Assembly: GCA_002269645.1 (NCBI GenBank)
Contig: NIVC01003162.1
Location: 1 to 64,000, forward strand
Direction of reading: 5' to 3'
Source of the DNA: Macrostomum lignano
Taxonomy: Eukaryota
Length of the DNA: 64,000 bases
Position 1 is the first letter of the stretch; each line of letters starts with the position of its first letter. This document shows positions 1,618 to 53,514 of this stretch, piece after piece. The notes beneath the pieces are model-generated. The model was not told where the DNA came from and ran no database searches. It saw only the letters and a program-made list of their open reading frames with translations. The position numbers were made by a program, and so were the translations under genes.

Positions 1618-3240
1618 TCAGTTCCCCAGACAGGCCAACCCCCGTCTGCACCGCAGTCTCAATGAGTTGAGCATTCCGCACACCTGCTGTTTGAAAAACC
1701 TGTTCATACAGCCGTAGATGACCGGGTTCACTCCGTGGTTGATGAAGTAGAAATAGTACACTGTCTGCATGAACAGCCCGCCCAGGCCCACGTGGCTGCC
1801 CTCGTTGCTGCTGCTCCCTCCTTCTGACCCGCTGGAGCCGCTGCTGTACAGCCTCCGCCACCAGCTGCTGTTCTGCTGCTGGCTGTAGTTGCCTCCGGAT
1901 GCCGCCGCCGAGCTCCAGTTGCCGAAGCTTGCCGCGGCAGCTTGGTACGACTGCCAGTCGCTTAAGTTGATGCCTCCAGTCGTCGCGCCGCCCGACCTCC
2001 CGGCGCCGGCCTCTTGCAGGTGGAACACCAGAAAGAAGGGCAAATAAGAGAGCAGATAAAAGAAAGTGATGATGCTCAACACCTTGGCTGTTTTTATGTG
2101 CGGCCGCTTCCTAGTCCGCTCTGACAGGTGCTTCTGCGCCTGCGCCAGGCGGTTGCTCACCACCGAGTCTTCGCGACGCTGGCTGCCGACCAGCATTCGG
2201 CGCTGCTCGGGCGCCTCTTCGTCAGCTTCTTCTTCACGTCTCGGCTCGGCCTCCTGGCTGTTACCGTCATCATCGGCCACACTGATTTCCTTGTTGGCAA
2301 ACTTCACCGCACAGCTTGAGGCGGCGGCTTCTTGCCCGCCCAGTGCCTGGTCGATGTCCGTCTCTAGGATGCCGTTGTTCTGCCTGTCCGGCTGGCAGTC
2401 TTTGATTCTGTTGATGCCGTCGGCATTGGTATTGTTGGCTATTGAGCTGCGGCCAGCCTTGCCCTTGCCCTTGTCCTTGGCGTTGGAGACGCGGCTGACG
2501 TAGCTTCGCGATTTGTCCCAGCGACGCTGCCGCTTGCGCACGAAGTAGAAAATATTGGCGTAAAAAAACATAATAGCCAGCAGCATGCACAGGAACAGCA
2601 GTGTTAAGCAGGCCTTGTACACCCTGACGGTGATCATTGGCAGGATGCTGTAGTCGGCGATGCAGTGAGCCATGGTGACCGGCCGGCTGAGGACTCGGCC
2701 GGGCAGTTTCACAATCACTGTCCGCCTGGTGCCAGTCGTCAATCCAAGCGGGGTGCCCACGGCGAAGCCCAGCAGCAGGGTGAGGCCGATGAGTCGCACG
2801 GCCTGTCGCCGGCCGGTCTGAATGCCGGGCACGAAGCAGATGATGGCGAAGCGGTCCACCGCGATCAGGCAGAGCAGGAAGGCGGATGACGTCACCAGAG
2901 AGCAGCGGAGAATGTGAAAGATTTTGCACATGAAGTCGGTGGTGGCGGCCCGCCAGACGTCCTGATAGATGGTTGACGGAATGACAACAGAACAGACGGT
3001 CAGGTCCAGCGTGGCCAGCGCGATCACGTACACATTCTGGGGCAGCTCGCGAAGTCCCCTATGAAAGAAGAAGACAACAAGGATGTTGCCAAACAGGCCG
3101 ATCAGGGCCAGAGCGCCCAGTGACAGCGTGATGGCTACCGACATGGCCAGGGGCAGCTCGCCGCCCTGCTGAGTGGCCTGCATCATCTGGCTTAGTTGGG
3201 AGTCCCGGATACTGCTGTTGCTGCTCATAGTGAACTTCAT
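1618..3240 (-). CDS. Intronless rhodopsin-like (class A) GPCR, ligand unknown; likely start ATG 3240 (or 3228)
   Basis: 7 hydrophobic segments, GN in TM1, LATLD in TM2, DRF at the end of TM3, SYLP in TM6, NPVIYG in TM7, N-terminal NSS sequon. The ORF extension 3241-3426 runs through a splice acceptor (AG 3283-3282) and a dispersed repeat, so it is excluded. Confidence 0.9.
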   Translation of the reverse strand: MKFTMSSNSSIRDSQLSQMMQATQQGGELPLAMSVAITLSLGALALIGLFGNILVVFFFHRGLRELPQNVYVIALATLDLTVCSVVIPSTIYQDVWRAATTDFMCKIFHILRCSLVTSSAFLLCLIAVDRFAIICFVPGIQTGRRQAVRLIGLTLLLGFAVGTPLGLTTGTRRTVIVKLPGRVLSRPVTMAHCIADYSILPMITVRVYKACLTLLFLCMLLAIMFFYANIFYFVRKRQRRWDKSRSYVSRVSNAKDKGKGKAGRSSIANNTNADGINRIKDCQPDRQNNGILETDIDQALGGQEAAASSCAVKFANKEISVADDDGNSQEAEPRREEEADEEAPEQRRMLVGSQRREDSVVSNRLAQAQKHLSERTRKRPHIKTAKVLSIITFFYLLSYLPFFLVFHLQEAGAGRSGGATTGGINLSDWQSYQAAAASFGNWSSAAASGGNYSQQQNSSWWRRLYSSGSSGSEGGSSSNEGSHVGLGGLFMQTVYYFYFINHGVNPVIYGCMNRFFKQQVCGMLNSLRLRCRRGLACLGN

Positions 3241-3350
3241 TTCTGCTGTGTTGCTTCTGCTGCTGTTTGTTGGCTTTTCTTCTGTGGAAGGTTTTGGCAA
3301 AAGAGAAATCTGTATGTAGAGATTGTAGATATGTATATGGAGTAGAGATT

Positions 3351-3570
3351 CTGCCCATTCCTCTGACTCGAGCACATGCAAGCGCGCCAACACAGTACAC
3401 AGGCACGCAATCGTACACACGCTCACACAGGGTGTACAGCGGTCCTGACTGTCTAATCGTCAGGCATGTGCCTTGAAGGCTAACCCTCATGGCTGTGAAT
3501 CACACGACAACCCCCCCCCCACCTGTCAATTTTTGAGCTCACGAGCCCCAAAACGGAATCAAACTTGGGG
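3351..3570. mobile_element. Dispersed repeat copy 1 (family with TGTACA-CCTGAC-N9-GTCAGG palindromic core)
   Basis: Shares CACAGGGTGTACAGCGGTCCTGACTGTCTAATCGTCAGGCATGT and flanks with copies at 4596, 6200, 17466, 23070, 43742. Confidence 0.75.
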
Positions 3571-4595: not shown

Positions 4596-4691
4596 ACGCG
4601 TGCTCATACAGGGTGTACATGGGCCCTGACTTCCTCATCATTAGTAGGAATGTACACACCCCGTGCCTTAGGCTAGAGCTGCACAAGCCCC
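4596..4691. mobile_element. Dispersed repeat copy 2 (diverged, internally deleted)
   Basis: CAGGGTGTACA..CCTGAC..TGTACA..GTGCCTTA..GCACAAGCCCC align to copies 1 and 4. Confidence 0.55.
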
Positions 4692-5743
4692 GAGGCAATT
4701 GAACGAGACAGTTCGAATCGTTCGAAACAGAGTTTGAAAGATACTGTACCCTTTTATACCAGTGTACTTTGTACAGCATACTAGATTTTCTACAAAAAAG
4801 GCACTGTGGTGCGCGTGAGCTCACAAATTGCTTTCTTCTACTCAATTGTTTGCCTCAGATAAGTATTGAACTGCCGCTTCCCATCTCTCTCTTCCCTCTC
4901 CCTACCTCTCTCTACCTCAGCACATTAGTTTTACCTGTTGGTTGATTCTGTCTACGCGTTCAAACCTTGCATTTTTTCCATTCCTTTGTTGTGCCAGCGC
5001 AGTGCAGGGTTGCACGGCCTAAAAGCATAGATGATTTTTCAAAACTGCCTCCGCATCGTTAACATTTTACAGCCAGTTAAATTGCCTGCTGACTTGTTGC
5101 TTATGCTTGAAATTATTTTGTCCCCCATTCATCTTGCCTGCATCAGCCGTTTTGCGTATACCAGTGTAGAGGATTTTTGTCCCCCTGGCAGAGAGCTGCG
5201 GCTGTGTGGGCTTTATTCTTTTCAACAATATATCTACATGTCGTGACCCGGGTCGGTTTGGGTGCCCAGTCCCGAGTACAATATATTTTACGTAATCTAA
5301 CAGGCGTAGTGACGCTCTGTCTGTACTTTTATGAATACGAGCAGGCGTGACGACGCTCTGCGATAATAGTTCGATTCCTCTGGTGTTGTGACACTCAGAG
5401 TTCACGCTGCGGCTCGAGGTGTGGTGACACTCTCGGGTGCTTCTAGTTTCGATACTGTAGGTTGTACACGCTATATAAAGTAACCGGTACAGTACTACAA
5501 TAATACGCAATATACAACGCTGCTGTGCCGCAGTGGTCACAGTCGCAGGCGTGATGACGCTCTAGCTATGGAATCACTGCTACGGCAAGGCCTCGGAAAA
5601 GCTAAAGAAGCGAATGAACTCGGGGGTCTTACCGGTGCCAGAAACTGTGGAGCTCGTTCGAGTATCGCTACCACTTGACCGCTTTATTTGTAGCTTTGGG
5701 TACCACAGATCGATAAACAGAGATGCCAAAATCCGAATTTGGA

Positions 5744-5790
5744 CATGCAATAAATTGAGTCCCCGCAGTAAGAGACCGTATAGACACGGC
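5744..5790 (-). ncRNA. Spliced-leader-exon-like sequence GCCGTGTCTATACGGTCTCTTACTGCGGGGACTCAATTTATTGCATG, not followed by GT
   Basis: The 3' 36 nt differ at about 2 positions from the Macrostomum SL as I recall it (..ACGGTCTCTTACTGCGAAGACTCAATTTATTGCATG; from memory, needs checking). Ends in AUG like flatworm SLs, and the 5' CCGT/ACGG hairpin is retained. Confidence 0.6.
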
Positions 5791-5950
5791 TCGCTTGAAT
5801 ATCGCTAGGTTAGATTGAAGAGCTAGGCACGGGCGCGGAGCGGAGAGCGGGGAGCTGGCTGGGCCAGGCTTGAGCACTCCACTTAACAGGGTAGAGGGGC
5901 AGACAACGCGAGAGAGAGAGAGAGATGCCAAACAAAAGAGACGACCCTTC

Positions 5951-6034
5951 AGCCAATCAGCGTGCCCGCCGAGCAGATCTGATTGACTGGGGGCCAGAAA
6001 AGAAAACCACAAAAACACAAGCCCAGCCAATCAG
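5951..6034. promoter_or_regulatory. CCAAT-box cluster (AGCCAATCAG x2 plus an inverted variant) 160-245 nt upstream of the SL-like sequence
   Basis: AGCCAATCAGCG at 5951 and 6025; CTGATTGACTG at 5979; matches the NF-Y consensus. Confidence 0.4.
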
Positions 6035-6199
6035 CGACCGCCGCGGGGAAAGACTCAAGCCGGGCTGAGCGCCCCCCCCCCCAACCAGCCAGAACTGGTC
6101 TGGGGATGGCCGCCTAGGGCGCACATAAAAAAACAACTCAAAAAGTGCAAGAGCACTCAACAGGCCAGACACTACATACGCGTGGAGCAGACCAGCTCA

Positions 6200-6374
6200 G
6201 CGGTGAACACAGCCATGAGGGCCAGCCCCCAAGGCACAGATAGTGTACATGCTTGAGGATTAGAAAGTCAGGACCGCAGTACACCCTGTGCGAGCGTGTG
6301 TATGAATGCAGTGCCTGCGTACTGTATTGGTGCGCTTGTGTGCGCTCAGGTCAGGAGTCAGTGGAATGGGCACA
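6200..6374. mobile_element. Dispersed repeat copy 3 (opposite orientation to copy 1)
   Basis: CACAGCCATGAGG..AAGGCACAGATAGTGTACATGCTTGAGGATTAGAAAGTCAGGACCGCAGTACACCCTGTG..GGAATGGGCAC. Confidence 0.75.
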
Positions 6375-6886
6375 ATTGGTTCGCCCGTATCTCTTTTTTT
6401 GGCAACCATTGTCCGTCTTCTGTCCCATTCTGTGTTTCGCCTCTTGTCTTCCGTCTTCTACCCCTCTATATTGCTTGCTGCCTCTCTTTGCACCTTTCCC
6501 TCCCTTCTCCTCTGTTGTCAGTGGATAAACTTGGCCTTGATTTGAGCCCCCTTGTAGTGAAATTCGAATGCCTTATAGAAACTCCTGACTGGCTGCAGTT
6601 TGACATTGATTTTGCGTCAAAACCAGAACGCGGACACAAGGAATACGAACTGATTGAACTGTCGTAAAACTGGACAAAAAAGTTAAAAAGGAAGTTTGCC
6701 ACACGGACAGGCCGACAGGGCAGGGTTAAAGTAACGACCTGCTTGCTTAGGGGCATGGAACCAATTCATTCATCACCAATATTAAAGCTGGAAGTGCAGC
6801 TCTGAAGGTCATTGGAAAACTGCAAAGCTGTGGGAGAGTGGCTTAAACTCTCTAGGCCATGACTGGTCAGCATCCTGTAGTTGGCC

Positions 6887-7072: not shown

Positions 7073-7524
7073 CTGTGTAGCACCAAGCAATAGTACTCTG
7101 CAAAAGTGCACGTTATTTGTTGTAAGTTACTTGTCTATGCCAGATCTACCGAACGTTCGACCGCACCCATAGGCGACACTGTACCCCTTTAGTTATCACA
7201 GAGTCCTCTGGACTAATTTGCAATAGATTTATCCCTTGCTTGAGTATAATTGCCATTCCTAGCAAAGAAAGTGTTTAACCCGGCGAGTCCGTCTATGTTC
7301 TTTGTTCTAAACCTTTTCATTTTGCTGCTTCAAGTGTCTTTGACTTTGAAAAAAACTTATAGGCTTTGCTAAAATTGAAAGTCTCTTAAACTTAACGATG
7401 TCTAAAAAGGGATACAAGTGGTTTAATTGGCATTTTATTAGTTCTTTTGCACGACCTTTGCACTGCTGACTGATATTTTCTGTCAGCCGCAAACTTTCAC
7501 CTGCGTCACATCAAGCATCTCTTT

Positions 7525-8250
7525 TGTCACACCAAGCGTCACCCCAGAGAGTCACACCAAGCGTCACCCCAGAGTCACACCAAGCGTCACCCCAGAGAGT
7601 CACACCAAGCGTCACCCTCCAGCGAGTCACACCAAGCGTCACCCCAGAGAGTCACACCAAGCGTCACCCTCCAGCGAGTCACACCAAGCGTCACCTCAAA
7701 GAGTCACACCAAGCGTCACCCCAGAGAGTCACATCAACCGTAACCCCACAGAGAGTCACACCAAGCGTCACCCCAGAGAGTCACACCAGGCGTCACATCA
7801 GAGTCACACCAAGCGTCACCCCAGAGAGTCACATCAACCGTAACCCCACAGAGAGTCACACCAAGCGTCACCCCAGAGAGTCACACCAGGCGTCACATCA
7901 AAGAGTCACACCAAGCGTCACCCCAGAGAGTCACATCAACCGTCACCCCAGAGAGTCACATCAACCGTCACCCCAGAGAGTCACATCAACCGTCACCCCA
8001 GAGAGTCACATCAACCGTCACCCCAGAAAGTCACATCAAGCGTCACCCCAGAAAGTCACACCAAGAGTCACCCCAGAGAGTCACATCAACCGTCACCCCA
8101 GAGAGTCACATCAACCGTCACCCCAGAGAGTCACATCAACCGTCACCCCAGAGAGTCACATCAACCGTCACCCCAGAGAGTCACATCAACCGTCACCCCA
8201 GAGAGTCACATCAACCGTCACCCCAGAGAGTCACACCAAGCGTCACTCAG
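7525..8250. repeat. Intronic minisatellite, ~25-bp unit (GTCACACCAAGCGTCACCCCAGAGA), ending just before the LYST acceptor
   Basis: Direct reading; forms the spurious N-terminal half of ORF 7524..9269. Confidence 0.95.
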
Positions 8251-8285
8251 CGTCACTCAAATCAAGTTTCTCTTTGCGCCCGCAG

Positions 8286-11200
8286 GCTGACAGCTCCGGC
8301 GACGCGCCGCAGTCAGCCAGCTGGTCATTCGACGAAGTCAAGGAGGTGCACCTTCGCCGCTACGAGCTCCGCGACAACGCCCTCGAGATTTTTCTGGCCA
8401 ACGGTGCCGCCTACCTGCTGGCGTTTCAGTCGCCTCGCGATCGCGACGAAGTGGCCCGCGTGGTGGACGGCCTGGAGTTGGACAGCCGCGTCCGCCAGCT
8501 CACAGTTGACGAGGCCCAGCGCCAGTGGGTCACCGGCCAGATGAGCAACTTCGAGTACTTGGCCTTCCTCAACACGGCCTCTGGCAGGTCCTACAACGAC
8601 CTCATGCAGTACCCCGTGTTCCCCTGGGTCCTGGCCGACTACGACTCCGTCGAGCTGGACCTGACCCAGCCGGCCACCTTCCGCGACCTCGCTAGGCCGA
8701 TCGGCACCCAGGACGACTCGGCCGTGGCCCGGCACCGGGACAAATACGAAGTGCTGGACAGGCAGTACAGGGAGCTCGGACCGGACCACGCCACGCCGCC
8801 CTATCACTATTCGAGTCACTATTCGAACTCGGGCACCGTGCTGCACTACTTGGTCCGCCTGCCGCCCTACACCCAGCTGTTCACCGTGTACCAGGACCGG
8901 CACTTCGACCTGCCCGATCGGACTTTTCACTCCATCCGAACCAGCTGGCGCTTGAGCTCGAAGCTGTCGGACTCGGACGTCAAGGAGCTCATTCCGGAGT
9001 TCTTCTGCCTGCCGGAGTTTTTTATCAACAGCGAGGAGCTCGACTTCGGCGTCAAGCAGTCCGGAGTTCGAGTTGACAATGTCGAACTGCCGCCCTGGGC
9101 CGCCGATGATCCGCGCCGGTTCGTCCTCATTCACCGGGCCGCCCTGGAGTCGCCGCTCGTCACTGAGAAACTGCACAAGTGGATTGACCTCATCTTCGGG
9201 TACAAGCAGACAGGTAATGTTCGGCTTGCTTGCTATGGGATTGAGGATCTGGGGGGATTATGGACTTAGGTGGAGATTGGGGATCTGGGTGGAGATTGGG
9301 GATCTGGGTGGAGATTGGGGATCTGGGTAGAGATTGGGGATCTGGGTGGAGATTGGGGATCTGGGTTGAGATTGGGGATCTGGGTTTAGATTGGGATCTG
9401 GGTTGAGATTAGGGACTTGGGTTGAGATTGGGGATCTGGGTTGAGATTGGGGATCTGGGTTGAGATTGGGGATCTGGGTTGAGATTGGGGTTCTGGGTTG
9501 AGATTGGGGATCTGGGTTTAGATTGAGGATCTGGGTTGAGATTAGGGATCTGGGTTTAGATTGAGGATCTGGGTTGAGATTGGGGATCTGGGTTTAGATT
9601 GGGGATCTGGGTTTAGATTGGGGATCTGGGTTGAGATTGGGGATCTGGGTTGAGATTGGGGATCTGGGTTTAGATTGGGGATCTGGGTTGAGATTGAGGA
9701 TCTGGAGAAGAGATTGAGGATCTGGATATGATATTGAGGATCTGGGGATGACATTGAGGATCTGGAGAAGAGATTGAGGATCTGGAGAAGAGATTGAGGA
9801 TCTGGGGATGAGATTGAGGATCTGGGGATGAGATTGAGGATCTGGGGGTGAGATTAGGGATATGGGGATGAGATTAGGGATCTGAGGATGAGAATAGGGA
9901 TCTGGGTTGAGATCGAGGATCTGAAGGTGAGATTGAGGATCTGGGTGAGATTGAGGATCTGTGGGTTAGATTGAGGATCTTGGGGTGAGATTGAGGATCT
10001 TGGGGTGAGATTGAGGATCTGGGGGTGAGACTGAGGATCTAGGGGCGAGATTAGGCATCTGGGGGGAGATTGAGGATCTGGGGGTGAGATTATCCGATAG
10101 CTAAATCTGCCTAAAAACTTTGTCGTCTCCTCTTAAACGCGCAGGCAAGGCGGCGCTCAGCTCGGTGAACCTGTTCCACCCGTACACCTACTTCGGCGCC
10201 ATCGACCTGGACCAGATCGACGACCCGGTGCGGCGCCGCGCCATCGAGACGATGATCAAGACGTACGGCCAGACGCCTAAGCAGCTGTTCCGATCGCCGC
10301 ACCAGCCGCCTGTGGCAGCGGCGCCTCGCTCTGGCCGGGTGCCCGGGGCTTTCGGCGTTCGATTTGGAAATTATTGCGGCTCGCCAGACTGCCAGGCCCC
10401 GCCCCAGGTGCGCTGCCGGGATGGGGCCAGCTGGGGCCGGCCTGTGTGGTGCTTCTGCCACTACAGGATCCGTGATATTATACTGGATCACCTTCCCAGA
10501 TCCTCAGTTGCTGGGCCAGCTATCAACCTCCCAGATCCTCAGTTTCTGGGCCAGCCTCCCAGATCCTCAGTTTCTGGGCCAATCTCCCAGATCCCTAGTT
10601 CCCTAGTTTCCGGGCCAGCCTCCCAGATCCCCAGTTTCTGGGCCAGCTTCCCAGATCCTCAGTTTCTGGGCCAGCCTCCCAGATCCTCAGTTTCTAGGCC
10701 AGCCTCCCGGATCCTCAGTTTCTGGGCCAGCCTCCCGGATCCTCAGTTTCTAGGCCAGCCTCCCGGATCCTCAGTTTCTGGGCCAGCCTCCCGGATCCTC
10801 AGTTTCTGGGCCAGCTTCCCAGATCCTCAGTTGCTGGGCCAGCCTCCCAGATCCTCAGTTTCTGGGCCAGCTTCCCAGATCCTCAGTTGCTGGGCCAGCC
10901 TCCCAGATCCTCAGTTGCTTGGCCAGCCGTCAACCTACCAGATCCTCAGTTTCTGGGCCAGCCTCCCAGATCCTCAGTTTCTGGGCCAGCCTCCCGGATT
11001 CTCAGTTTCTGGGCCAGCTTCTCAGATCCTCAGTTTCTGGGCCAGCCTCCCAGATCCTCAGTTTCTGGGCCAGCCTCCCAGATCCTCAGTTTCTGGGCCA
11101 GCCTCCCAGATCCTCAGTTTCTTGGCCACTGCCAGCCTCTCAGATGCTTAATCCCCTCTCTTCCGCTGGACCACAGGTTGCCTGGTGCGAGCAGCTGGCG

Positions 11201-14924: not shown

Positions 14925-23436
<8,512 letters not shown>

Positions 23437-25410: not shown

Positions 25411-25919
25411 CGCTACACTGAATCTGGGGCAGGTTGCCCAGAGTATCGATTTATAAGAAGATTTATACAAACTGTAAGGAAAATGTTTGTTCCGCTGAAC
25501 AATTCTGATCTTGTCGAAATTGGTTCAGTTTTTGACAAGGTCTAAATCAGATTTACTGAAACAAATTTTCGGAGTTTAACTTACGTTATTATCATTAAGG
25601 ACGCTTAACAGGTCTGGAAAGTAGTATAGTTTAAGAAATTCTGCGTTTTTCTTGAAGCAGCCACAAAGGCAGAATTCATTGCCACTTAGGAAATAAACAA
25701 AAAATAGTGGACTATATAGATTAGTAGCGCTTTTCGTTTTTTTACTTAAAGATAACATAACGATAATTCAAACACATCGATGCTACGAGCTAATGGTTCA
25801 TACGTTATCTGATGCCCTGTTTCAGATCCCAAAGATGATTAAAGTGTAATGTATAAAAATATCTATTTTACACAAATGGTAATTGAAGAGGGCTTGTACT
25901 ACTACAGCTCCGACCTACG

Positions 25920-27246
25920 CTCGGTAGTTAGTTTCCACAACCTAGAACCCAACGGAGCTGATTCGACTGAAAACTGCTCGGTAGTTAGTTTCCACAACCT
26001 AGAATCCAACGGAGCTAATTCGACTGAAAACTACTCGGTAGTTAGTTTCCACAACCTAGAATCCAACGGAGCTGATTCGACTGAAAACTGCTCGGTAGTT
26101 AGTTTCCACAACCTAGAACCCAACGGAGCTGATTCGACTGAAAACTGCTCGGTAGTTAGTTTCCACAACCTAGAACCCAACGGAGCTGATTCGACTGAAA
26201 ACTGCTCGGTAGTTAGTTTCCACAACCTAGAATCCAACGGAGCTAATTCGACTGAAAACTGCTCGGTAGTTAGTTTCCACAACCTAGAACCCAACGGAGC
26301 TAATTCGACTGAAAACTGCTCGGTAGTTAGTTTCCACAACCTAGAATCCAACGGAGCTGATTCGACTGAAAACTGCTCGGTAGTTAGTTTCCACAACCTA
26401 GAACCCAACGGAGCTAATTCGACTGAAAACTACTCGGTAGTTAGTTTCCACAACCTAGAACCCAACGGAGCTGATTCGACTGAAAACTGCTCGGTAGTTA
26501 GTTTCCACAACCTAGAATCCAACGGAGCTGATTCGACTGAAAACTGCTCGGTAGTTAGTTTCCACAACCTAGAACCCAACGGAGCTAATTCGACTGAAAA
26601 CTACTCGGTAGTTAGTTTCCACAACCTAGAACCCAACGGAGCTGATTCGACTGAAAACTGCTCGGTAGTTAGTTTCCACAACCTAGAACCCAACGGAGCT
26701 GATTCGACTGAAAACTGCTCGGTAGTTAGTTTCCACAACCTAGAATCCAACGGAGCTGATTCGACTGAAAACTGCTCGGTAGTTAGTTTCCACAACCTAG
26801 AACCCAACGGAGCTAATTCGACTGAAAACTACTCGGTAGTTAGTTTCCACAACCTAGAACCCAACGGAGCTGATTCGACTGAAAACTGCTCGGTAGTTAG
26901 TTTCCACAACCTAGAATCCAACGGAGCTGATTCGACTGAAAACTACTCGGTAGTTAGTTTCCACAACCTAGAACCCAACGGAGCTGATTCGACTGAAAAC
27001 TGCTCGGTAGTTAGTTTCCACAACCTAGAACCCAACGGAGCTAATTCGACTGAAAACTACTCGGTAGTTAGTTTCCACAACCTAGAACCCAACGGAGCTG
27101 ATTCGACTGAAAACTGCTCGGTAGTTAGTTTCCACAACCTAGAATCCAACGGAGCTAATTCGACTGAAAACTGCTCGGTAGTTAGTTTCCACAACCTAGA
27201 ATCCAACGGAGCTAATTCGACTGAAAACTGCTCGGTAGTTAGTTTT
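25920..27246. repeat. Highly homogeneous 57-bp minisatellite, ~23 units
   Basis: CTCGGTAGTTAGTTTCCACAACCTAGAA(C/T)CCAACGGAGCT(G/A)ATTCGACTGAAAACT(G/A); only three variable sites. Confidence 0.97.
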
Positions 27247-32753: not shown

Positions 32754-45351
<12,598 letters not shown>

Positions 45352-49240: not shown

Positions 49241-49414
49241 ACTGCAGCTGGGATAACCTTGAATTGACTGATAGGTGGGTGCAGGCTGATTGCTTTGCAC
49301 TTTGTTGCTTTGAGAAGGTCTGCTAATCTGTTGCCTAAATGTCATGTGATGTGATGTATATTCGCCTTACCAATGAGTTAGCGGAAAATTATGGTTAAGG
49401 TTTAAAGTTATATT

Positions 49415-49802
49415 CCAGCCAATCAGAGACGAGATCAGTCTAGCTTAGAGCAAGCATCCAGCCAATCAGAAACGAGATCAGTCTAGCTTAGAGCAAGCAT
49501 CCAACCAATCAGAGACGAGATCAGTGTAGCTTAGCTAGCTTCCAGCCAATCTGAGACGAGATCAGTCTAGCCTAGCTAGTTTCCAGCCAATCAGAGACGA
49601 GATCAATCTAGCTTAGCTAGTTTCCAGCCAATCAGAGACGAGATCAGTCTAGCTTAGCTAGTTTCCAGCCAATCAGAGACGAGATCAGTCTAGCCTAGCT
49701 AGTTTCCAGCCAATCAGAGACGAGATCAGTCTAGCCTAGCTAGTTTCCAGCCAATCAGAGACGAGATCTGCCGTCTAGATTAGTTTTTCCAGCTAATCAG
49801 AA
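49415..49802. repeat. ~41-bp tandem repeat, each unit carrying CAGCCAATCAG
   Basis: About 10 units of CCAGCCAATCAGAGACGAGATCAGTCTAGCTTAGCTAGTTT. Confidence 0.92.
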
Positions 49803-50389
49803 CTTCCGTTTAAACTCCAATTAAAATTCCAATCATGTTTATTTTCAATAGCAGATTTTAAGAAAGTAGTTGACATTTCGTGTGTAGTTTATTTTTACTT
49901 GATCCATTTTTGTTATATACTATTCTGTAAAATACTTTCGATCTCAGAGTGTTGCGTTATTTATATTTATATTTAAGAGTAGTAAAATTTTCATCTTGTT
50001 TTAGTAATCGCTGTTTTAATTTTATACCATAGTTCCATGCTATAAAATGGAATAATAATTCCATACTATACCCTGCAGCCTTTGCTTAAACCATTATACC
50101 GAGTAATTTTTAATACTATGCTTTTACCACTGTGATATGTAAATCTATTTATCATGGGAATACAAGTTATTAGTACACTAACAGGCTAATCCGTTCTGTT
50201 TGCTGTGCAGTTTTCTGGTTACCAGCCGCACTATATATCAAATTAATACGCACATTAAACTGACAGCTGATTTATTCTCTATCTCCGTCACTTTCTCTTG
50301 TTTTTGAAAGGAGGGTACGAGCAGCATTGTGGAGGTTTAGTGTGGAGGATGAGGATGAGATTAGGTCAGAAGAAAGTAGTGGAAGTGTA

Positions 50390-52945
50390 AAGAGGGGCAG
50401 GGTGGATACAGGGGCGATAGAGGGGCAGGGTGGATAGAGGGGCAGGGAAGATAGAGGGGCAGGGTGGATAGAGGGGCAGGGAGATAGAGGGGCAGGGAGG
50501 ATAGAGGGGCAGGGAAGATAGAGGGGCAGGGAAGATAGAGGGGCAGGGAGGATACAGGGGCGATAGAGGGGCAGGGAGGATAGAGGGGCAGGGTGGATAG
50601 AGGGGCAGGAAGATAGAGGGGCAGGGTGGATAGAGGGGCAGGAAGATAGAGGGGCAGGGTGGATAGAGGGGCAGGAAGATAGAGGGGCAGGGAGGATAGA
50701 GGGGCAGGGAAGATAGAGGGGCAGGGTGGATAGAGGGGCAGGGAGATAGAGGGGCAGGGAGGATAGAGGGGCAGGGAAGATAGAGGGGCAGGGAAGATAG
50801 AGGGGCAGGGAGGATACAGGGGCGATAGAAGGGCAGGGAGGATAGAGGGGCAGGGTGGATAGAGGGGCAGGAAGATAGAGGGGCAGGGTGGATAGAGGGG
50901 CAGGAAGATAGAGGGGCAGGGAGGATAGAGGGGCAGGGAAGATAGAGGGGCAGGGTGGATAGAGGGGCAGGGAGATAGAGGGGCAGGGAGGATAGAGGGG
51001 CAGGGAAGATAGAGGGGCAGGGTGGATAGAGGGGCAGGAAGATAGAGGGGCAGGGAAGATAGAGGGGCAGGAAGATAGAGGGGCAGGAAGGATAGAGGGG
51101 CAGGGAAGATAGAGGGGCAGGGTGGATAGAGGGGCAGGGAGATAGAGGGGCAGGGAAGATAGAGAGGCAGGGAAGATAGAGGGGCAGGGAGGATACAGGG
51201 GCGATAGAGGGGCAGGGAGGATAGAGGGGCAGGGTGGATAGAGGGGCAGGAAGATAGAGGGGCAGGAAGATAGAGGGGCAGGGTGGATAGAGGGGCAGGA
51301 AGATAGAGGGGCAGGGTGGATAGAGGGGCAGGAAGATAGAGGGGCAGGGAGGATAGAGGGGCAGGGAAGATAGAGGGGCAGGGTGGATAGAGGGGCAGGG
51401 AGATAGAGGGGCAGGGAGGATAGAGGGGCAGGGAAGATAGAGGGGCAGGGAGGATACAGGGGCGATAGAGGGACAGGGAGGATAGAGGGCAGGGTGGATA
51501 GAGGGGCAGGAAGATAGAGGGGCAGGGAGGATACAGGGGCGATAGAGGGACAGGGAGGATAGAGGGGCAGGGTGGATAGAGGGGCAGGGAAGATAGAGGG
51601 GCAGGGAAGATAGAGGGGCAGGGAGGATACAGGGGCGATAGAGGGGCAGGGAGGATAGAGGGGCAGGGTGGATAGAGGGGCAGGGTGGATAGAGGGGCAG
51701 GAAGATAGAGGGGCAGGGTGGATAGAGGGGCAGGAAGATAGAGGGGCAGGGAGGATAGAGGGGCAGGGAAGATAGAGGGCAGGGTGGATAGAGGGGCAGG
51801 GAGATAGAGGGGCAGGGAGGATAGAGGGGCAGGGAAGATAGAGGGGCAGGGTGGATAGAGGGGCAGGAAGATAGAGGGGCAGGGTGGATAGAGGGGCAGG
51901 AAGATAGAGGGGCAGGGAGGATATAGGGGCAGGGAAGATAGAGGGGCAGGGTGGATAGAGGGGCAGGGAGATAGAGGGGCAGGGAAGATAGAGAGGCAGG
52001 GAAGATAGAGGGGCAGGGAGGATACAGGGGCGATAGAGGGGCAGGGAGGATAGAGGGGCAGGGTGGATAGAGGGGCAGGAAGATAGAGGGGCAGGGTGGA
52101 TAGAGGGGCAGGAAGATAGAGGGGCAGGGTGGATAGAGGGGCAGGAAGATAGAGGGGCAGGGAGGATAGAGGGGCAGGGAAGATAGAGGGGCAGGGTGGA
52201 TAGAGGGGCAGGGAGATAGAGGGGCAGGGAGGATAGAGGGGCAGGGAAGATAGAGGGGCAGGGAGGATACAGGGGCGATAGAGGGACAGGGAGGATAGAG
52301 GGGCAGGGTGGATAGAGGGGCAGGAAGATAGAGGGGCAGGGAGGATACAGGGGCGATAGAGGGACAGGGAGGATAGAGGGGCAGGGTGGATAGAGGGGCA
52401 GGAAGATAGAGGGGCAGGGAGGATAGAGGGGCAGGAAGATAGAGGGGCAGGGTGGATAGAGGGGCAGGGAAGATAGAGGGGCAGGGAGGATACAGGGGCG
52501 ATAGAGGGGCAGGGAGGATAGAGGGCAGGGAAGATAGAGGGGCAGGGAGGATACAGGGGCGATAGAGGGCCAGGGAGGATAGAGGGGCAGGGTGGATAGA
52601 GGGGCAGGAAGATAGAGGGGCAGGGAGGATAGAGGGGCAGGGAAGATAGAGGGGCAGGGAGGATACAGGGGCGATAGAGGGGCAGGGAGGATAGAGGGGC
52701 AGGGAGGATACAGGGGCGATAGAGGGGCAGGGAGGATAGAGGGGCAGGGAAGATAGAGGGGCAGGGAGGATACAGGGGCGATAGAGGGCCAGGGAGGATA
52801 GAGGGGCAGGGTGGATAGAGGGGCAGGAAGATAGAGGGGCAGGGAGGATAGAGGGGCAGGGAAGATAGAGGGGCAGGGAGGATACAGGGGCGATAGAGGG
52901 GCAGGGAGGATACAGGGGCGATAGAGGGGCAGGGAAGATAGGGGG
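50390..52945. repeat. 2.5-kb purine-rich minisatellite (GATAGAGGGGCAGGG(A/T)G variants)
   Basis: Direct reading; source of the spurious 926-aa Pro-rich ORF. Confidence 0.97.
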
Positions 52946-53514
52946 GTAGGGAGGTTAGAGGGGTAGGGATGATAGAGGAAGTATAGAGGGAATGGGACTA
53001 TTACAGAGGCTGGGAGAGTGGCAGGGGTATAAACAGGAGCATGACAAGTCAATCTGCTCTACAAGTGCATCAAGGGAGAGCGGTTATTCGCAGCTCAGCA
53101 TCGCAGAGTGCCTCCCGGGAGTTGGCATGGAACTGGCCGGATAAATTCAAATGTTTTTGCTGAGCCTGCGCTTAAAAAGCGGAATTTTTCGAGCCGTCGT
53201 TTTTTCACTTCGCAGCGGAGAGTCGGGCAGCCATTTCCCAATTAGCATGGGAGCGGCAGGGCAGGGCTGGGAACATCAAAATGAAGCCGTTTTAGTCCGG
53301 CTGGCGATTTCGGGGACTGCGCTGTCCGTGTGCCGAGCTGATTGTGAATTCTGCTGCTGCGATTCGGGATTAGTCTAGACAGATGAAGTGCTGGGAGGCT
53401 GGCTGCACTGGCTCGGGTGCATTGCCGGTTCAGTGGACTCGCGTCTGAGGTGATTGGGGATGGCTCGAGAGGTGATCGGGATGGCTCGAGAGCTGCAAAT
53501 TTAGAGGTCGGAGT

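What the first reader, a model, noticed from the sequence alone, without database searches (positions are those of the whole stretch)
5700..5790. Genomic spliced-leader-like exon with no splice donor: SL variant, SL-derived small RNA, or footprint of a retroposed trans-spliced mRNA
Seen: the minus strand reads GCCGTGTCTATACGGTCTCTTACTGCGGGGACTCAATTTATTGCATG, then TCCAAATTCGGATTTTGG. It ends in AUG, keeps a CCGT/ACGG 5' hairpin and a GTCTCT/GGGGAC hairpin, and is followed by a small CCAAAT-TCGG-ATTTTGG hairpin containing an Sm-site-like GATTTTGG. Known: flatworm SL exons end in AUG and are followed by GU in the SL RNA gene; from memory, the Macrostomum SL is about 2 mismatches from the last 36 nt here. 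Inference: with no GT after AUG this is not a canonical SL RNA gene. It may be a divergent SL-like RNA with its own CCAAT promoter (5951-6034) or a reverse-transcribed trans-spliced 5' end.
Basis: partly seen in the sequence, partly recalled or inferred. Interest (0 to 1): 0.8.

Follow-up and report, generated by a model that had tools for sequence, protein, structure and literature searches.

The report
Retroposed spliced-leader transcript relic
A 47-base copy of the Macrostomum flatworm spliced leader sits in this genome as the head of a 120-base insert flanked by a duplicated target site, so it is most likely an old reverse-transcribed trans-spliced RNA and not a spliced-leader RNA gene; this kind of relic is already known in other organisms.

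Summary
The sequence is real. Minus strand 5790-5744 matches the published Macrostomum spliced leader (SL): 34/36 identical over the last 36 nt and the first 5 nt identical, with only the 5' hairpin loop and one AA>GG changed.

I recovered two genuine Macrostomum-type SL RNA genes from public contigs (L005, L007). They share a 95%-identical gene: the SL exon, a GTAAGA donor, stem-loop 2, a Sm site and stem-loop 3.

In the window, homology starts at the first SL nucleotide and stops at the exon's last G. No donor or intron homology was detected by HMM, covariance model or alignment. The predicted fold is no better than shuffles.

A 19-nt direct repeat (16/19) abuts the SL 5' end and recurs 137 nt downstream. 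It brackets a 118-120-nt insert: SL plus a 73-nt body, with AATAAA 12 nt before the insert's 3' end. An intact LINE with its own 13-bp target-site duplication lies in the same window.

- **Best reading (about 0.65):** a decayed retro-insertion of a short trans-spliced RNA.
- **Weaknesses:** no poly(A) tail and no parent gene found.
- **CCAAT boxes:** they lie outside the insert and belong to the host locus.

This is a new member of a known kind, of modest interest.

The parts
5789..5807 (-). Upstream copy of the flanking direct repeat (putative target-site duplication), TAGCGATATTCAAGCGAGC. Its last two bases (GC) overlap the first two bases of the SL, which is microhomology at the 5' junction.
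   Evidence: only two matches at up to 3 mismatches in the whole window on both strands, against 0.02 expected; empirical p of about 0.001 or less for the flank abutting the SL start to recur within 300 nt.
5744..5790 (-). SL-exon copy, 47 nt, ending in ATG. It is 34/36 identical to the Macrostomum SL over its last 36 nt, its first 5 nt are identical, the loop is AAAG>GTCTAT, and AA is changed to GG.
   Evidence: Published SLs. Covariance model R1 matches only model positions 22-45 and stops at the exon end.
5671..5743 (-). 73-nt body of the insert. It is unrelated to the SL RNA intron and has no other copy in the window. With the SL's ATG it forms a 20-codon ORF (5746-5684, MSKFGFWHLCLSICGTQSYK*).
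   Evidence: no significant similarity to the L005/L007 intron or to anything else in the window. (fold z = +0.28).
5683..5688 (-). AATAAA hexamer 12 nt upstream of the insert's 3' boundary. This is consistent with a polyadenylation signal, and its TAA is also the stop of the 20-codon ORF. No poly(A) tail follows.
   Evidence: Read directly from the sequence.
5652..5670 (-). Downstream copy of the flanking direct repeat, TAGCGATACTCGAACGAGC (16/19 identical to the upstream copy).
5626..5632 (-). Host context, not part of the insert: GTAAGAC splice-donor-like site (CACCG|GTAAGAC) 20 nt past the downstream repeat. It may be the end of a host 5' exon of the minus-strand gene (GPCR ORF 3243-1618).
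   Evidence: Sequence. The GTAAG donor motif in M. lignano is reported in PMC8629364. Its use as a donor here is inferred, not shown.
5950..6036 (+). Host context, not part of the insert: two exact CAGCCAATCAGCG (NF-Y/CCAAT-type) boxes 74 bp apart. They lie 160-246 nt upstream of the SL copy and outside the duplicated target site.
   Evidence: (D8).
34955..40338 (-). Supporting context: an apparently intact LINE. ORF1 is 39984-38866. ORF2 is 38866-35048 and carries endonuclease, reverse transcriptase and RNase H domains. It has a (TAAG)n tail and a perfect 13-bp target-site duplication TAGCATCAGATAC (40351-40339 and 34954-34942). It shows an RT source and a TSD-making insertion process in this genome.

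Best explanation
Window 5790-5671 (minus strand) is a decayed retro-insertion: a DNA copy of a short, capped, SL-trans-spliced RNA. The source could be an mRNA fragment or prematurely polyadenylated transcript, or a trans-spliced retroelement transcript.

Proposed sequence of events:
1. The SL exon was joined by trans-splicing to a 73-nt body.
2. The RNA was reverse-transcribed, most plausibly by a LINE endonuclease/reverse transcriptase through target-primed reverse transcription.
3. The copy was inserted into the promoter-proximal or 5'-exon region between a minus-strand GPCR gene and a plus-strand LYST-like BEACH gene, duplicating a 17-19-bp target (TAGCGATAYTCRARCGAGC).
4. It has since accumulated roughly 8-15% change.

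It is not an SL RNA gene and cannot donate a leader, because the donor and the whole intron half are absent.

Shown here:
- the homology boundaries;
- the absence of intron homology;
- the flanking direct repeat;
- the presence of an RT-encoding LINE.

Inferred:
- the RNA intermediate;
- the enzyme responsible;
- the age;
- that the clustered SL differences arose after insertion.
For: 1. **SL identity.** 34/36 identity plus an identical 5' pentamer to the published Macrostomum SL, against 0 of 100 shuffles.
2. **Real SL RNA genes for comparison.** Two genes recovered from public contigs, L005 615-720 and L007 1589-1692, are 95% identical across exon and intron: GTAAGACACCG.TGATCCAAT..TGGATC..TATTTTTAGCAGCCCT..ATGGGCT. 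They fold canonically (z = -2.78).
3. **No intron in the window.**
   - An intron-only HMM run at maximum sensitivity does not find the locus at all.
   - Local alignments give p = 0.20-0.24.
   - Covariance model R1 matches only positions 22-45 and ends at the exon's last base.
   - BLAST similarity to the two SL RNA genes and to four of the five trans-spliced mRNAs (L001, L003, L004, L006) ends at or within 1 nt of the ATG; the L002 alignment runs 6 nt further (to 5738) through a gapped match.
4. **5' boundary.** Homology starts at GCCGT, the 5' end of the mature SL. The upstream 150 nt are unrelated to those of L005 and L007.
5. **Flanking direct repeat.** A 19-nt repeat (16/19) abuts the SL start and recurs 137 nt downstream. 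There are 2 matches in the window against 0.02 expected, with empirical p of about 0.001 or less.
6. **3' end.** AATAAA ends 12 nt before the insert's 3' boundary.
7. **RT source.** An intact LINE with endonuclease, RT and RNase H and a perfect 13-bp TSD lies in the same window. Both TSDs begin TAGC.
8. **Precedent.**
   - SL-tagged retrocopies are well documented in dinoflagellates (PMC6050394).
   - Partial SLs at retroelement loci have been noted in parasitic flatworms (PMC12582326).
Against: - There is no poly(A) tail or clear A-rich remnant between the body and the downstream repeat.
- No parent gene was found. No AG|TCCAAATTCGG acceptor exists in the window, and the source genome is not in the searchable databases.
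- A 73-nt body is unusually short for an mRNA.
- The direct repeat is imperfect (3 of 19 differ).
- The SL differences are clustered in a hairpin loop and in a dinucleotide that strengthens a second hairpin. This could instead mean that the copy derives from a variant SL.
- The first 13 nt after the junction (TCCAAATTCGGAT) resemble stem-loop 2 of real SL RNAs (TCCAATTCTGGAT) at p of about 0.02. This weakens to 0.07-0.15 for longer stretches.
Confidence: 0.65

Rival explanations
1. SL RNA-derived pseudogene. This would be a copy of an SL RNA gene, either a DNA duplicate or a retropseudogene of the unspliced SL RNA of about 106 nt. It would have lost the donor through a roughly 15-nt deletion (GTAAGACACCGGTGA), and its intron half would have decayed beyond recognition.
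For: - The insert length (118-120 nt) is close to that of an SL RNA (about 106 nt).
- The lack of a poly(A) tail fits a small-RNA retropseudogene.
- TCCAAATTCGGAT, then TTTTGGCA, line up collinearly with stem-loop 2 and the Sm site of L005/L007. For the first 13 nt p is about 0.02.
- SL-RNA pseudogenes lacking a donor are reported in parasitic flatworms (PMC12582326).
Against: - The deletion would have to start exactly at the exon-intron junction.
- Several more indels are needed, and stem-loop 3 (AGCCC...GGGCT) is entirely missing.
- The intron HMM, the covariance model and the alignments are all non-significant.
- The exon part and the flanking repeats are still 84-94% conserved, so neutral decay should have left the intron about 90% recognisable, given that it is 90% conserved between L005 and L007.
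- No upstream promoter similarity is seen.
Confidence: 0.15
2. The SL copy marks the 5' end of a retroposed, trans-spliced mRNA of the downstream intronless GPCR (ORF 3243-1618, same strand), as in dinoflagellate SL-tagged retrogenes. The intervening 2.5 kb would then be 5' UTR swollen by later repeat insertions.
For: - The GPCR lies on the same strand and has a single 541-codon exon with a 7tm_1 domain.
- Dispersed-repeat copies at 3348-3497 and 4602-4668 lie between the SL copy and the ORF.
- There is a dinoflagellate precedent.
- M. lignano has a locus at which an SL-bearing sequence maps to the 5' end of a protein-coding gene (PMC8629364).
Against: - The significant direct repeat closes the insert after only 120 nt.
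- The known repeats explain only about 0.2 kb of the 2.5 kb.
- Rhodopsin-type GPCR genes are often intronless anyway (general knowledge).
- No matching target duplication occurs anywhere downstream of the GPCR.
Confidence: 0.06
3. A functional SL-like RNA gene, either a variant SL or an SL-derived Sm-class small RNA. It would be transcribed from the CCAAT-box promoter, with the GGGG/GTCTAT changes as structure-preserving evolution.
For: - The differences from the canonical SL are confined to a loop, and the AA>GG change lengthens the GGUCUCU/GGGGACU helix.
- An RAU4GR-like motif, GAUUUUGG, follows.
- Two NF-Y-type boxes lie upstream.
Against: - There is no GU donor at the junction.
- The exon's UCUUAC has lost its GUAAGA pairing partner, which is seen in real genes.
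- The folding is no better than shuffles.
- The Sm-like motif is inside the putative hairpin, not between two stems.
- The CCAAT boxes are 160-246 nt upstream and outside the duplicated target site.
- The shared upstream motif of L005 and L007 is absent here.
It returned six SL-bearing contigs, all with AA and none with GG.
Confidence: 0.04

Closest known systems
DinoSL-tagged retrogenes ('recycled cDNAs') of dinoflagellates (Slamovits & Keeling 2008; reviewed in PMC6050394; PMC5585692)
   Same: A genomic copy of the spliced leader without its donor or intron. It is taken as a tag showing that the adjoining DNA passed through a trans-spliced RNA and reverse transcription.
   Different: - In dinoflagellates the relict SLs sit directly upstream of retained protein-coding retrogenes. 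They are often stacked and truncated at the SL's internal AG, and they number in the thousands.
- Here there is a single full-length 47-nt SL on a 73-nt non-coding-looking body in a flatworm, flanked by a LINE-type target-site duplication.
Leader-only loci associated with LTR/LINE elements, and donor-less SL-RNA pseudogenes, in parasitic flatworms (PMC12582326)
   Same: Both are in the phylum Platyhelminthes. In both, genomic leader sequence lacks the other SL-RNA features, and that paper interprets such loci as integration of retroelement transcripts that had received the SL. It also reports SL-RNA loci with an unconserved donor, read as pseudogenes.
   Different: - Those loci carried partial leaders and lay inside annotated mobile elements.
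- This one is a complete leader with defined boundaries and its own target duplication. Its body matches no retroelement in the window, and it comes from a free-living macrostomid rather than a parasite.
Canonical Macrostomum SL RNA gene (109 bp in M. lignano, PMC8629364; environmental examples L005 and L007 found here)
   Same: The exon: the same 5' pentamer and the same last 36 nt apart from 2 substitutions, ending in AUG.
   Different: The window copy lacks the GTAAGA donor, stem-loop 2, the AUUUUUAG Sm site, stem-loop 3, the stable three-hairpin fold and the shared upstream motif.
The sequence first reported as the M. lignano 'SL RNA' (Wasik et al. 2015), reassigned by Ustyantsev & Berezikov (PMC8629364)
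   Same: An SL-bearing sequence that does not fold like an SL RNA and maps to the 5' end of a protein-coding gene rather than to an SL RNA gene.
   Different: I could not read that sequence because the paper is not held. Whether it is a genomic SL copy of the same kind is unknown.
snRNA and other small-RNA retropseudogenes, and LINE-mediated processed pseudogenes (general knowledge)
   Same: A short RNA-derived insert whose 5' end equals the RNA's 5' end, flanked by a target-site duplication of 10-20 bp.
   Different: The source RNA here is a splicing product (leader plus acceptor exon), not a primary small RNA, and no poly(A) tail is preserved.

Membership tests
Flatworm (Macrostomum-type) SL RNA gene | SL exon of about 45 nt ending in AUG | tested here: met
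   34/36 identity plus the 5' GCCGT, compared with the published SLs and with L005/L007.
Flatworm (Macrostomum-type) SL RNA gene | GU (GTAAG) splice donor immediately after the AUG, able to pair with UCUUAC in the exon | tested here: not met
   ATG is followed by TCCAAA. L005 and L007 both have ATG|GTAAGACACCG, paired with the exon in the predicted fold.
Flatworm (Macrostomum-type) SL RNA gene | Intron half with stem-loop 2, a single-stranded Sm site and stem-loop 3 | tested here: not met
   The intron-only HMM gives no hit at the locus. Covariance model R1 stops at model position 45. Alignments give p = 0.2. The only weak signal is a 13-nt resemblance to stem-loop 2 at p of about 0.02.
Flatworm (Macrostomum-type) SL RNA gene | Stable three-hairpin fold | tested here: not met
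   z = -0.4 and -0.05 for the window unit, against -2.78 for L005.
Flatworm (Macrostomum-type) SL RNA gene | snRNA-type upstream promoter shared with other SL RNA genes | tested here: inconclusive
   L005 and L007 share a GTA.T..TAGTAGG.....TCTA..AAAA block upstream, and the window's 150 nt upstream show nothing similar. However, the promoter of these genes has not been defined experimentally, and the comparison is across species.
Flatworm (Macrostomum-type) SL RNA gene | Transcription, TMG cap, Sm binding, and donation of the leader to mRNAs | not testable with these tools
   No RNA data for the source organism are available. A public metagenome scan that allowed the GG variant returned only AA leaders.
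SL-tagged retrocopy (processed, RNA-derived insertion) | Homology to the SL begins at the RNA's 5' end and ends at the splice junction, followed by unrelated 'acceptor exon' sequence | tested here: met
   Four of the five environmental trans-spliced mRNAs show the same break at or within 1 nt of the ATG; the L002 alignment runs 6 nt further, to 5738.
SL-tagged retrocopy (processed, RNA-derived insertion) | Flanking target-site duplication | tested here: met
   A 19-nt repeat, 16/19 identical, at 5807-5789 and 5670-5652. Two matches in the window against 0.02 expected, with p of about 0.001 or less.
SL-tagged retrocopy (processed, RNA-derived insertion) | 3' poly(A) tail or other retroelement-type tail | tested here: not met
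   No A-run precedes the downstream repeat. There is only an AATAAA 12 nt upstream of the boundary. The window's own LINE ends in (TAAG)n, not poly(A).
SL-tagged retrocopy (processed, RNA-derived insertion) | Identifiable parent gene or transcript with an AG acceptor in front of the body sequence | tested here: inconclusive
   None in the window. The source genome and its relatives are absent from the searchable collections.
SL-tagged retrocopy (processed, RNA-derived insertion) | A reverse-transcriptase source in the genome | tested here: met
   An intact LINE with Exo_endo_phos_2, RVT_1 and RNase_H domains and a perfect 13-bp TSD.

The most novel reading that the evidence does not exclude
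The 120-nt unit could be a retrocopy of a previously unknown short SL-bearing RNA class. One possibility is a second, donor-less or variant (GTCTAT-loop, GGGG) SL-like small RNA with a hairpin plus a GAUUUUGG Sm-like site. In that case the flatworm would make more than the single SL RNA described for Macrostomum. The clustered, helix-preserving differences from the canonical SL and the weak resemblance of the first 13 nt to stem-loop 2 would then be real signals, not chance.
Probability: 0.08. Interest if true: 0.6.

Novelty: new member of a known kind. Interest (0 to 1): 0.3.

Why it matters
- **Annotation.** Leader-only genomic copies can be mistaken for SL RNA genes. PMC8629364 reports that this has already happened once for M. 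lignano. They can also make SL-read mapping call false trans-splice sites. A clear rule separates the two: check for the GTAAGA donor and the conserved intron, and look for target-site duplications.
- **Biology.** The spliced leader is a built-in tag of RNA-mediated duplication. Such relics, counted genome-wide, could measure retroposition in flatworms the way DinoSL relicts do in dinoflagellates.
- **By-product.** The two environmental SL RNA genes recovered here give a cross-species view of the Macrostomum-type SL RNA intron.
- **Limit.** On its own, a single decayed 120-bp relic has little functional consequence. At most it adds an upstream AUG and an AAUAAA to a host 5' region.

Tried and rejected
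1. **Rfam.** There was no hit in the window at gathering thresholds, and no SL RNA hit at 5300-6300 at relaxed thresholds, only weak unrelated matches. This is uninformative, because the genuine SL RNA genes in L005 and L007 also match no Rfam family.
2. **Orthologous or homeologous loci through proteins.** The GPCR and BEACH searches found nothing closer than 26% and 55% identity, and the exact look-up failed. No empty-site comparison was possible.
3. **My own lead that the post-ATG sequence is the SL RNA intron with a 15-nt donor deletion.** It was not supported by local alignment (p = 0.24), by nhmmer at maximum sensitivity or by the covariance model. Only a residual p of about 0.02 remains for the first 13 nt.
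4. **The idea that the GTAAGAC at 5632-5626 is the displaced SL donor of a gene split by an insertion.** The alignment of what follows it to the intron gives p = 0.20, and the direct repeats bracket the exon plus body, not the body alone.
5. **The 12-mer TTTGGCATCTCT shared by the body and 5932-5921.** It gave p = 0.003 locally but is at chance level across the window (E = 0.19, with longer chance matches elsewhere).
6. **Similarity of the body to the LINE 3' end or to the 170-bp dispersed repeat.** None was found.
7. **Poly(A)-site spacing in the environmental mRNAs.** The contigs do not end in poly(A), so this was uninformative.
8. **Viral-contig scan for the leader.** No matches.
9. **Wasik et al. 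2015.** The paper is not held, so its mis-assigned 'SL RNA' could not be compared.
10. **My first control for the direct repeat.** It was invalid because of the window's many tandem arrays, so I redid it with unlinked 17- and 19-mers.
Full report
**What is there**

On the minus strand, 5790-5744 reads GCCGTGTCTATACGGTCTCTTACTGCGGGGACTCAATTTATTGCATG.

The published Macrostomum spliced leaders are:
- CCGTAAAGACGGTCTCTTACTGCGAAGACTCAATTTATTGCATG in M. lignano (PMC5173321; the 35-nt core is in PMC8629364);
- the same sequence with an extra 5' G in M. cliftonense, and one base shorter at the 5' end (CGTAAAG...) in M. hystrix (PMC10468722 Table S3).

The window copy therefore shares the first five bases and 34 of the last 36 (BLAST 94.4%). 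It differs only in the loop of the 5' hairpin (AAAG>GTCTAT) and in one dinucleotide (AA>GG). It occurs once in the window and never in shuffles.

The window also carries:
- about 30 minisatellite arrays;
- a rhodopsin-type GPCR ORF on the minus strand, 3243-1618;
- a LYST-like PH-BEACH gene on the plus strand from about 7.5 kb;
- a mucolipin-like ORF;
- an intact LINE.

**Getting real SL RNA genes for comparison**

The protein databases hold no close relative of the window's genes, so no orthologous locus could be fetched. Pattern scans of the public contig collections were more useful.

- The metagenome scan found five contigs that begin with the canonical leader followed by unrelated sequence (L001-L004, L006). 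These are trans-spliced mRNAs.
- It also found one 3-kb contig with the leader at an internal position (L005).
- The genome-contig scan found a second internal copy (L007). This contig is labelled as a Flavobacteriaceae MAG but also carries a U1 snRNA gene, so it is flatworm contamination.

L005 615-720 and L007 1589-1692 are bona fide SL RNA genes. Each has the 45-nt exon, then GTAAGACACCG(G/T)TGATCCAAT..TGGATC..TATTTTTAGCAGCCCT..ATGGGCT. They are 95% identical overall. In the predicted fold the donor pairs with UCUUAC of the exon, followed by stem-loop 2, a single-stranded AUUUUUAG and stem-loop 3 (z = -2.78). This matches the description of the M. lignano gene as a 109-bp unit with a GTAAG donor, three hairpins and a Sm-like site (PMC8629364).

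**Where the homology stops**

Against these genes the window matches only the exon.
- The similarity begins at GCCGT, the first base of the mature leader. The 150 nt upstream are unrelated to those of L005 and L007, which share a motif block with each other.
- The similarity ends at the G of the ATG.
- A covariance model of the whole SL RNA matches only model positions 22-45.
- An HMM of the intron half, run with all filters off, does not list the locus among its chance-level hits.
- Local alignments of the intron with the following 84 or 344 nt score no better than shuffles (p = 0.24 and 0.20).

I had first thought that TCCAAATTCGGAT...TTTTGGCA was stem-loop 2 plus the Sm site after a 15-nt deletion of the donor. 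These tests do not support that. What remains is a p of about 0.02 resemblance of the first 13 nt, which fades to 0.07-0.15 for longer stretches.

However, the 47-nt, 73-nt and 120-nt stretches fold no better than shuffled sequence (z = -0.58, +0.28, -0.05).

**An insertion signature**

The 19 nt that end two bases into the leader (TAGCGATATTCAAGCGAGC, 5807-5789) recur as TAGCGATACTCGAACGAGC at 5670-5652, which is 16/19 identical. These are the only two matches at up to 3 mismatches anywhere in the window on either strand, with 0.02 expected. Unlinked 17- and 19-mers match the downstream 300 nt that well in about 0.1% of trials or fewer (self-hits excluded). An earlier control was spoiled by the tandem arrays.

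The repeats bracket a 118-120-nt unit made of the 47-nt leader and a 73-nt body.
- The shared GC at the 5' junction is ordinary microhomology.
- An AATAAA ends 12 nt before the 3' boundary (5688-5683).
- Read from the leader's ATG, the unit contains a 20-codon ORF whose stop lies inside that hexamer.
- No poly(A) run is present.

The three differences between the repeat copies, and the changes in the leader, both suggest an old event of roughly 8-15% divergence. That estimate is an inference.

**A source of reverse transcriptase**

The window holds a 5.4-kb LINE (40338-34955, minus strand).
- It has an intact ORF1 and an ORF2 with endonuclease, RT and RNase H domains.
- It ends in a (TAAG)n tail.
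- It has a perfect 13-bp target duplication, TAGCATCAGATAC.
- Both that duplication and the one around the leader start with TAGC. This is suggestive of the same nicking preference, but it is a post hoc 4-nt match.

**Interpretation**

A stretch of DNA whose similarity to an SL RNA gene begins at the RNA's cap site, ends at the splice junction, continues with unrelated sequence and is enclosed by a target-site duplication is what a reverse-transcribed, trans-spliced RNA should look like. I put this at about 0.65. The body could come from one of two sources:
- a short or prematurely polyadenylated mRNA, which the AATAAA favours;
- the 3' end of a retroelement transcript that received the leader at a cryptic acceptor, which the missing poly(A) favours.

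I cannot tell which without the genome.

The CCAAT boxes (two exact CAGCCAATCAGCG at 5950-5962 and 6024-6036) lie outside the duplication. They belong to the host intergenic or promoter region between the divergent GPCR and BEACH genes. A good donor-like site (CACCG|GTAAGAC, 5633|5632) 20 nt past the insert suggests that the relic may sit in a host 5' exon, but that is untested.

**Rivals**

- **SL RNA pseudogene that lost its donor (0.15).** It fits the size and the lack of poly(A), and it has the weak 13-nt signal. It needs a deletion that starts exactly at the junction, plus loss of the rest of an intron that is 90% conserved between species, while the exon and the flanking repeats stayed 84-94% intact.
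- **GPCR retrogene tagged by the leader (0.06).** This conflicts with the repeat closing the insert after 120 nt.
- **Functional variant SL or SL-derived small RNA (0.04).** It lacks a donor, a fold, a proper Sm context and promoter similarity. The GG variant was not among the leaders recovered from public metagenomes, even though the pattern allowed it.

**Comparison with what is known**

- Leader-tagged retrocopies are a textbook feature of dinoflagellates (PMC6050394, PMC5585692).
- In parasitic flatworms, hundreds of leader-only loci inside LTR/LINE elements were set aside as probable integrations of trans-spliced retroelement transcripts, and donor-less SL-RNA pseudogenes were noted (PMC12582326).
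- In M. lignano the first published 'SL RNA' was later shown to map to the 5' end of a protein-coding gene (PMC8629364).

This locus is thus a new, well-delimited example of a known kind, in a free-living flatworm. Interest is modest (0.3).

Noticed in passing
L007 1121-1283 and 1589-1692 (JAGQZA010000190.1): A contig filed as a Flavobacteriaceae MAG (HKST-UBA79) carries a eukaryotic U1 snRNA gene (Rfam RF00003, 151.7 bits). About 300 bp downstream it carries a Macrostomum-type SL RNA gene. This is flatworm contamination in a bacterial MAG, and it shows U1-SL RNA gene linkage.
   Followed up: partly
L005 615-720 (Ga0302322_100095745); L001-L004 and L006 (Ga0316592): A public metagenome contig holds a complete Macrostomum-type SL RNA gene. 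Five contigs of another sample begin with the canonical leader, so they are trans-spliced flatworm mRNAs in an environmental data set. In L005, GCCGTAAA is partly duplicated 15 nt upstream of the gene.
   Followed up: partly
window 34955-40338 (-): An apparently intact LINE of 5.4 kb. It has ORF1 (372 aa) and ORF2 (1272 aa, with endonuclease, RT and RNase H), a (TAAG)n tail and a perfect 13-bp target-site duplication TAGCATCAGATAC. It is probably a recent insertion.
   Followed up: partly
window 3348-3497, 6208-6376, 43743-43860, 23073-23167, 17470-17581, 4602-4668: An unclassified dispersed repeat family of about 170 bp, with copies 75-96% alike. Two copies in inverted orientation flank the 2.7-kb segment that contains the SL relic. 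No tRNA-like head was found by ARAGORN.
   Followed up: partly
window 49413-49768: A 41-bp tandem array (8.6 copies) in which every unit carries CAGCCAATCAGAG. That is one mismatch from the CCAAT-box 13-mer found twice upstream of the SL relic.
   Followed up: no
window, whole (e.g. 1-617, 7526-8246, 9269-10091, 25919-27245, 41608-43687, 50409-52978): About 30 minisatellite arrays with periods of 11-57 bp occupy a large share of the window. Several create long spurious ORFs, for example the 926-aa ORF at 50272-53052 and the N-terminal part of the ORF at 7524-9269. The array at 50.4-53.0 kb has a GC skew of about 0.6-0.7.
   Followed up: no
window 5300-5563 (+ coordinates): Three to five degenerate copies of a motif of about 19 nt lie just downstream of the relic on the minus strand. 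On the plus strand the motif reads GCAGGCGTGAYGACGCTCT, and on the minus strand AGAGCGTCRTCACGCCTGC. Its meaning is unknown.
   Followed up: no
window 7524-11151 (+) and 1618-3243 (-): There is a LYST-like PH-BEACH gene whose expected very long N-terminal coding region is not evident in the 7.5 kb upstream. There is also an intronless rhodopsin-type GPCR whose best database relative is only 26% identical. The nearest relatives of both are absent from the protein collection.
   Followed up: partly
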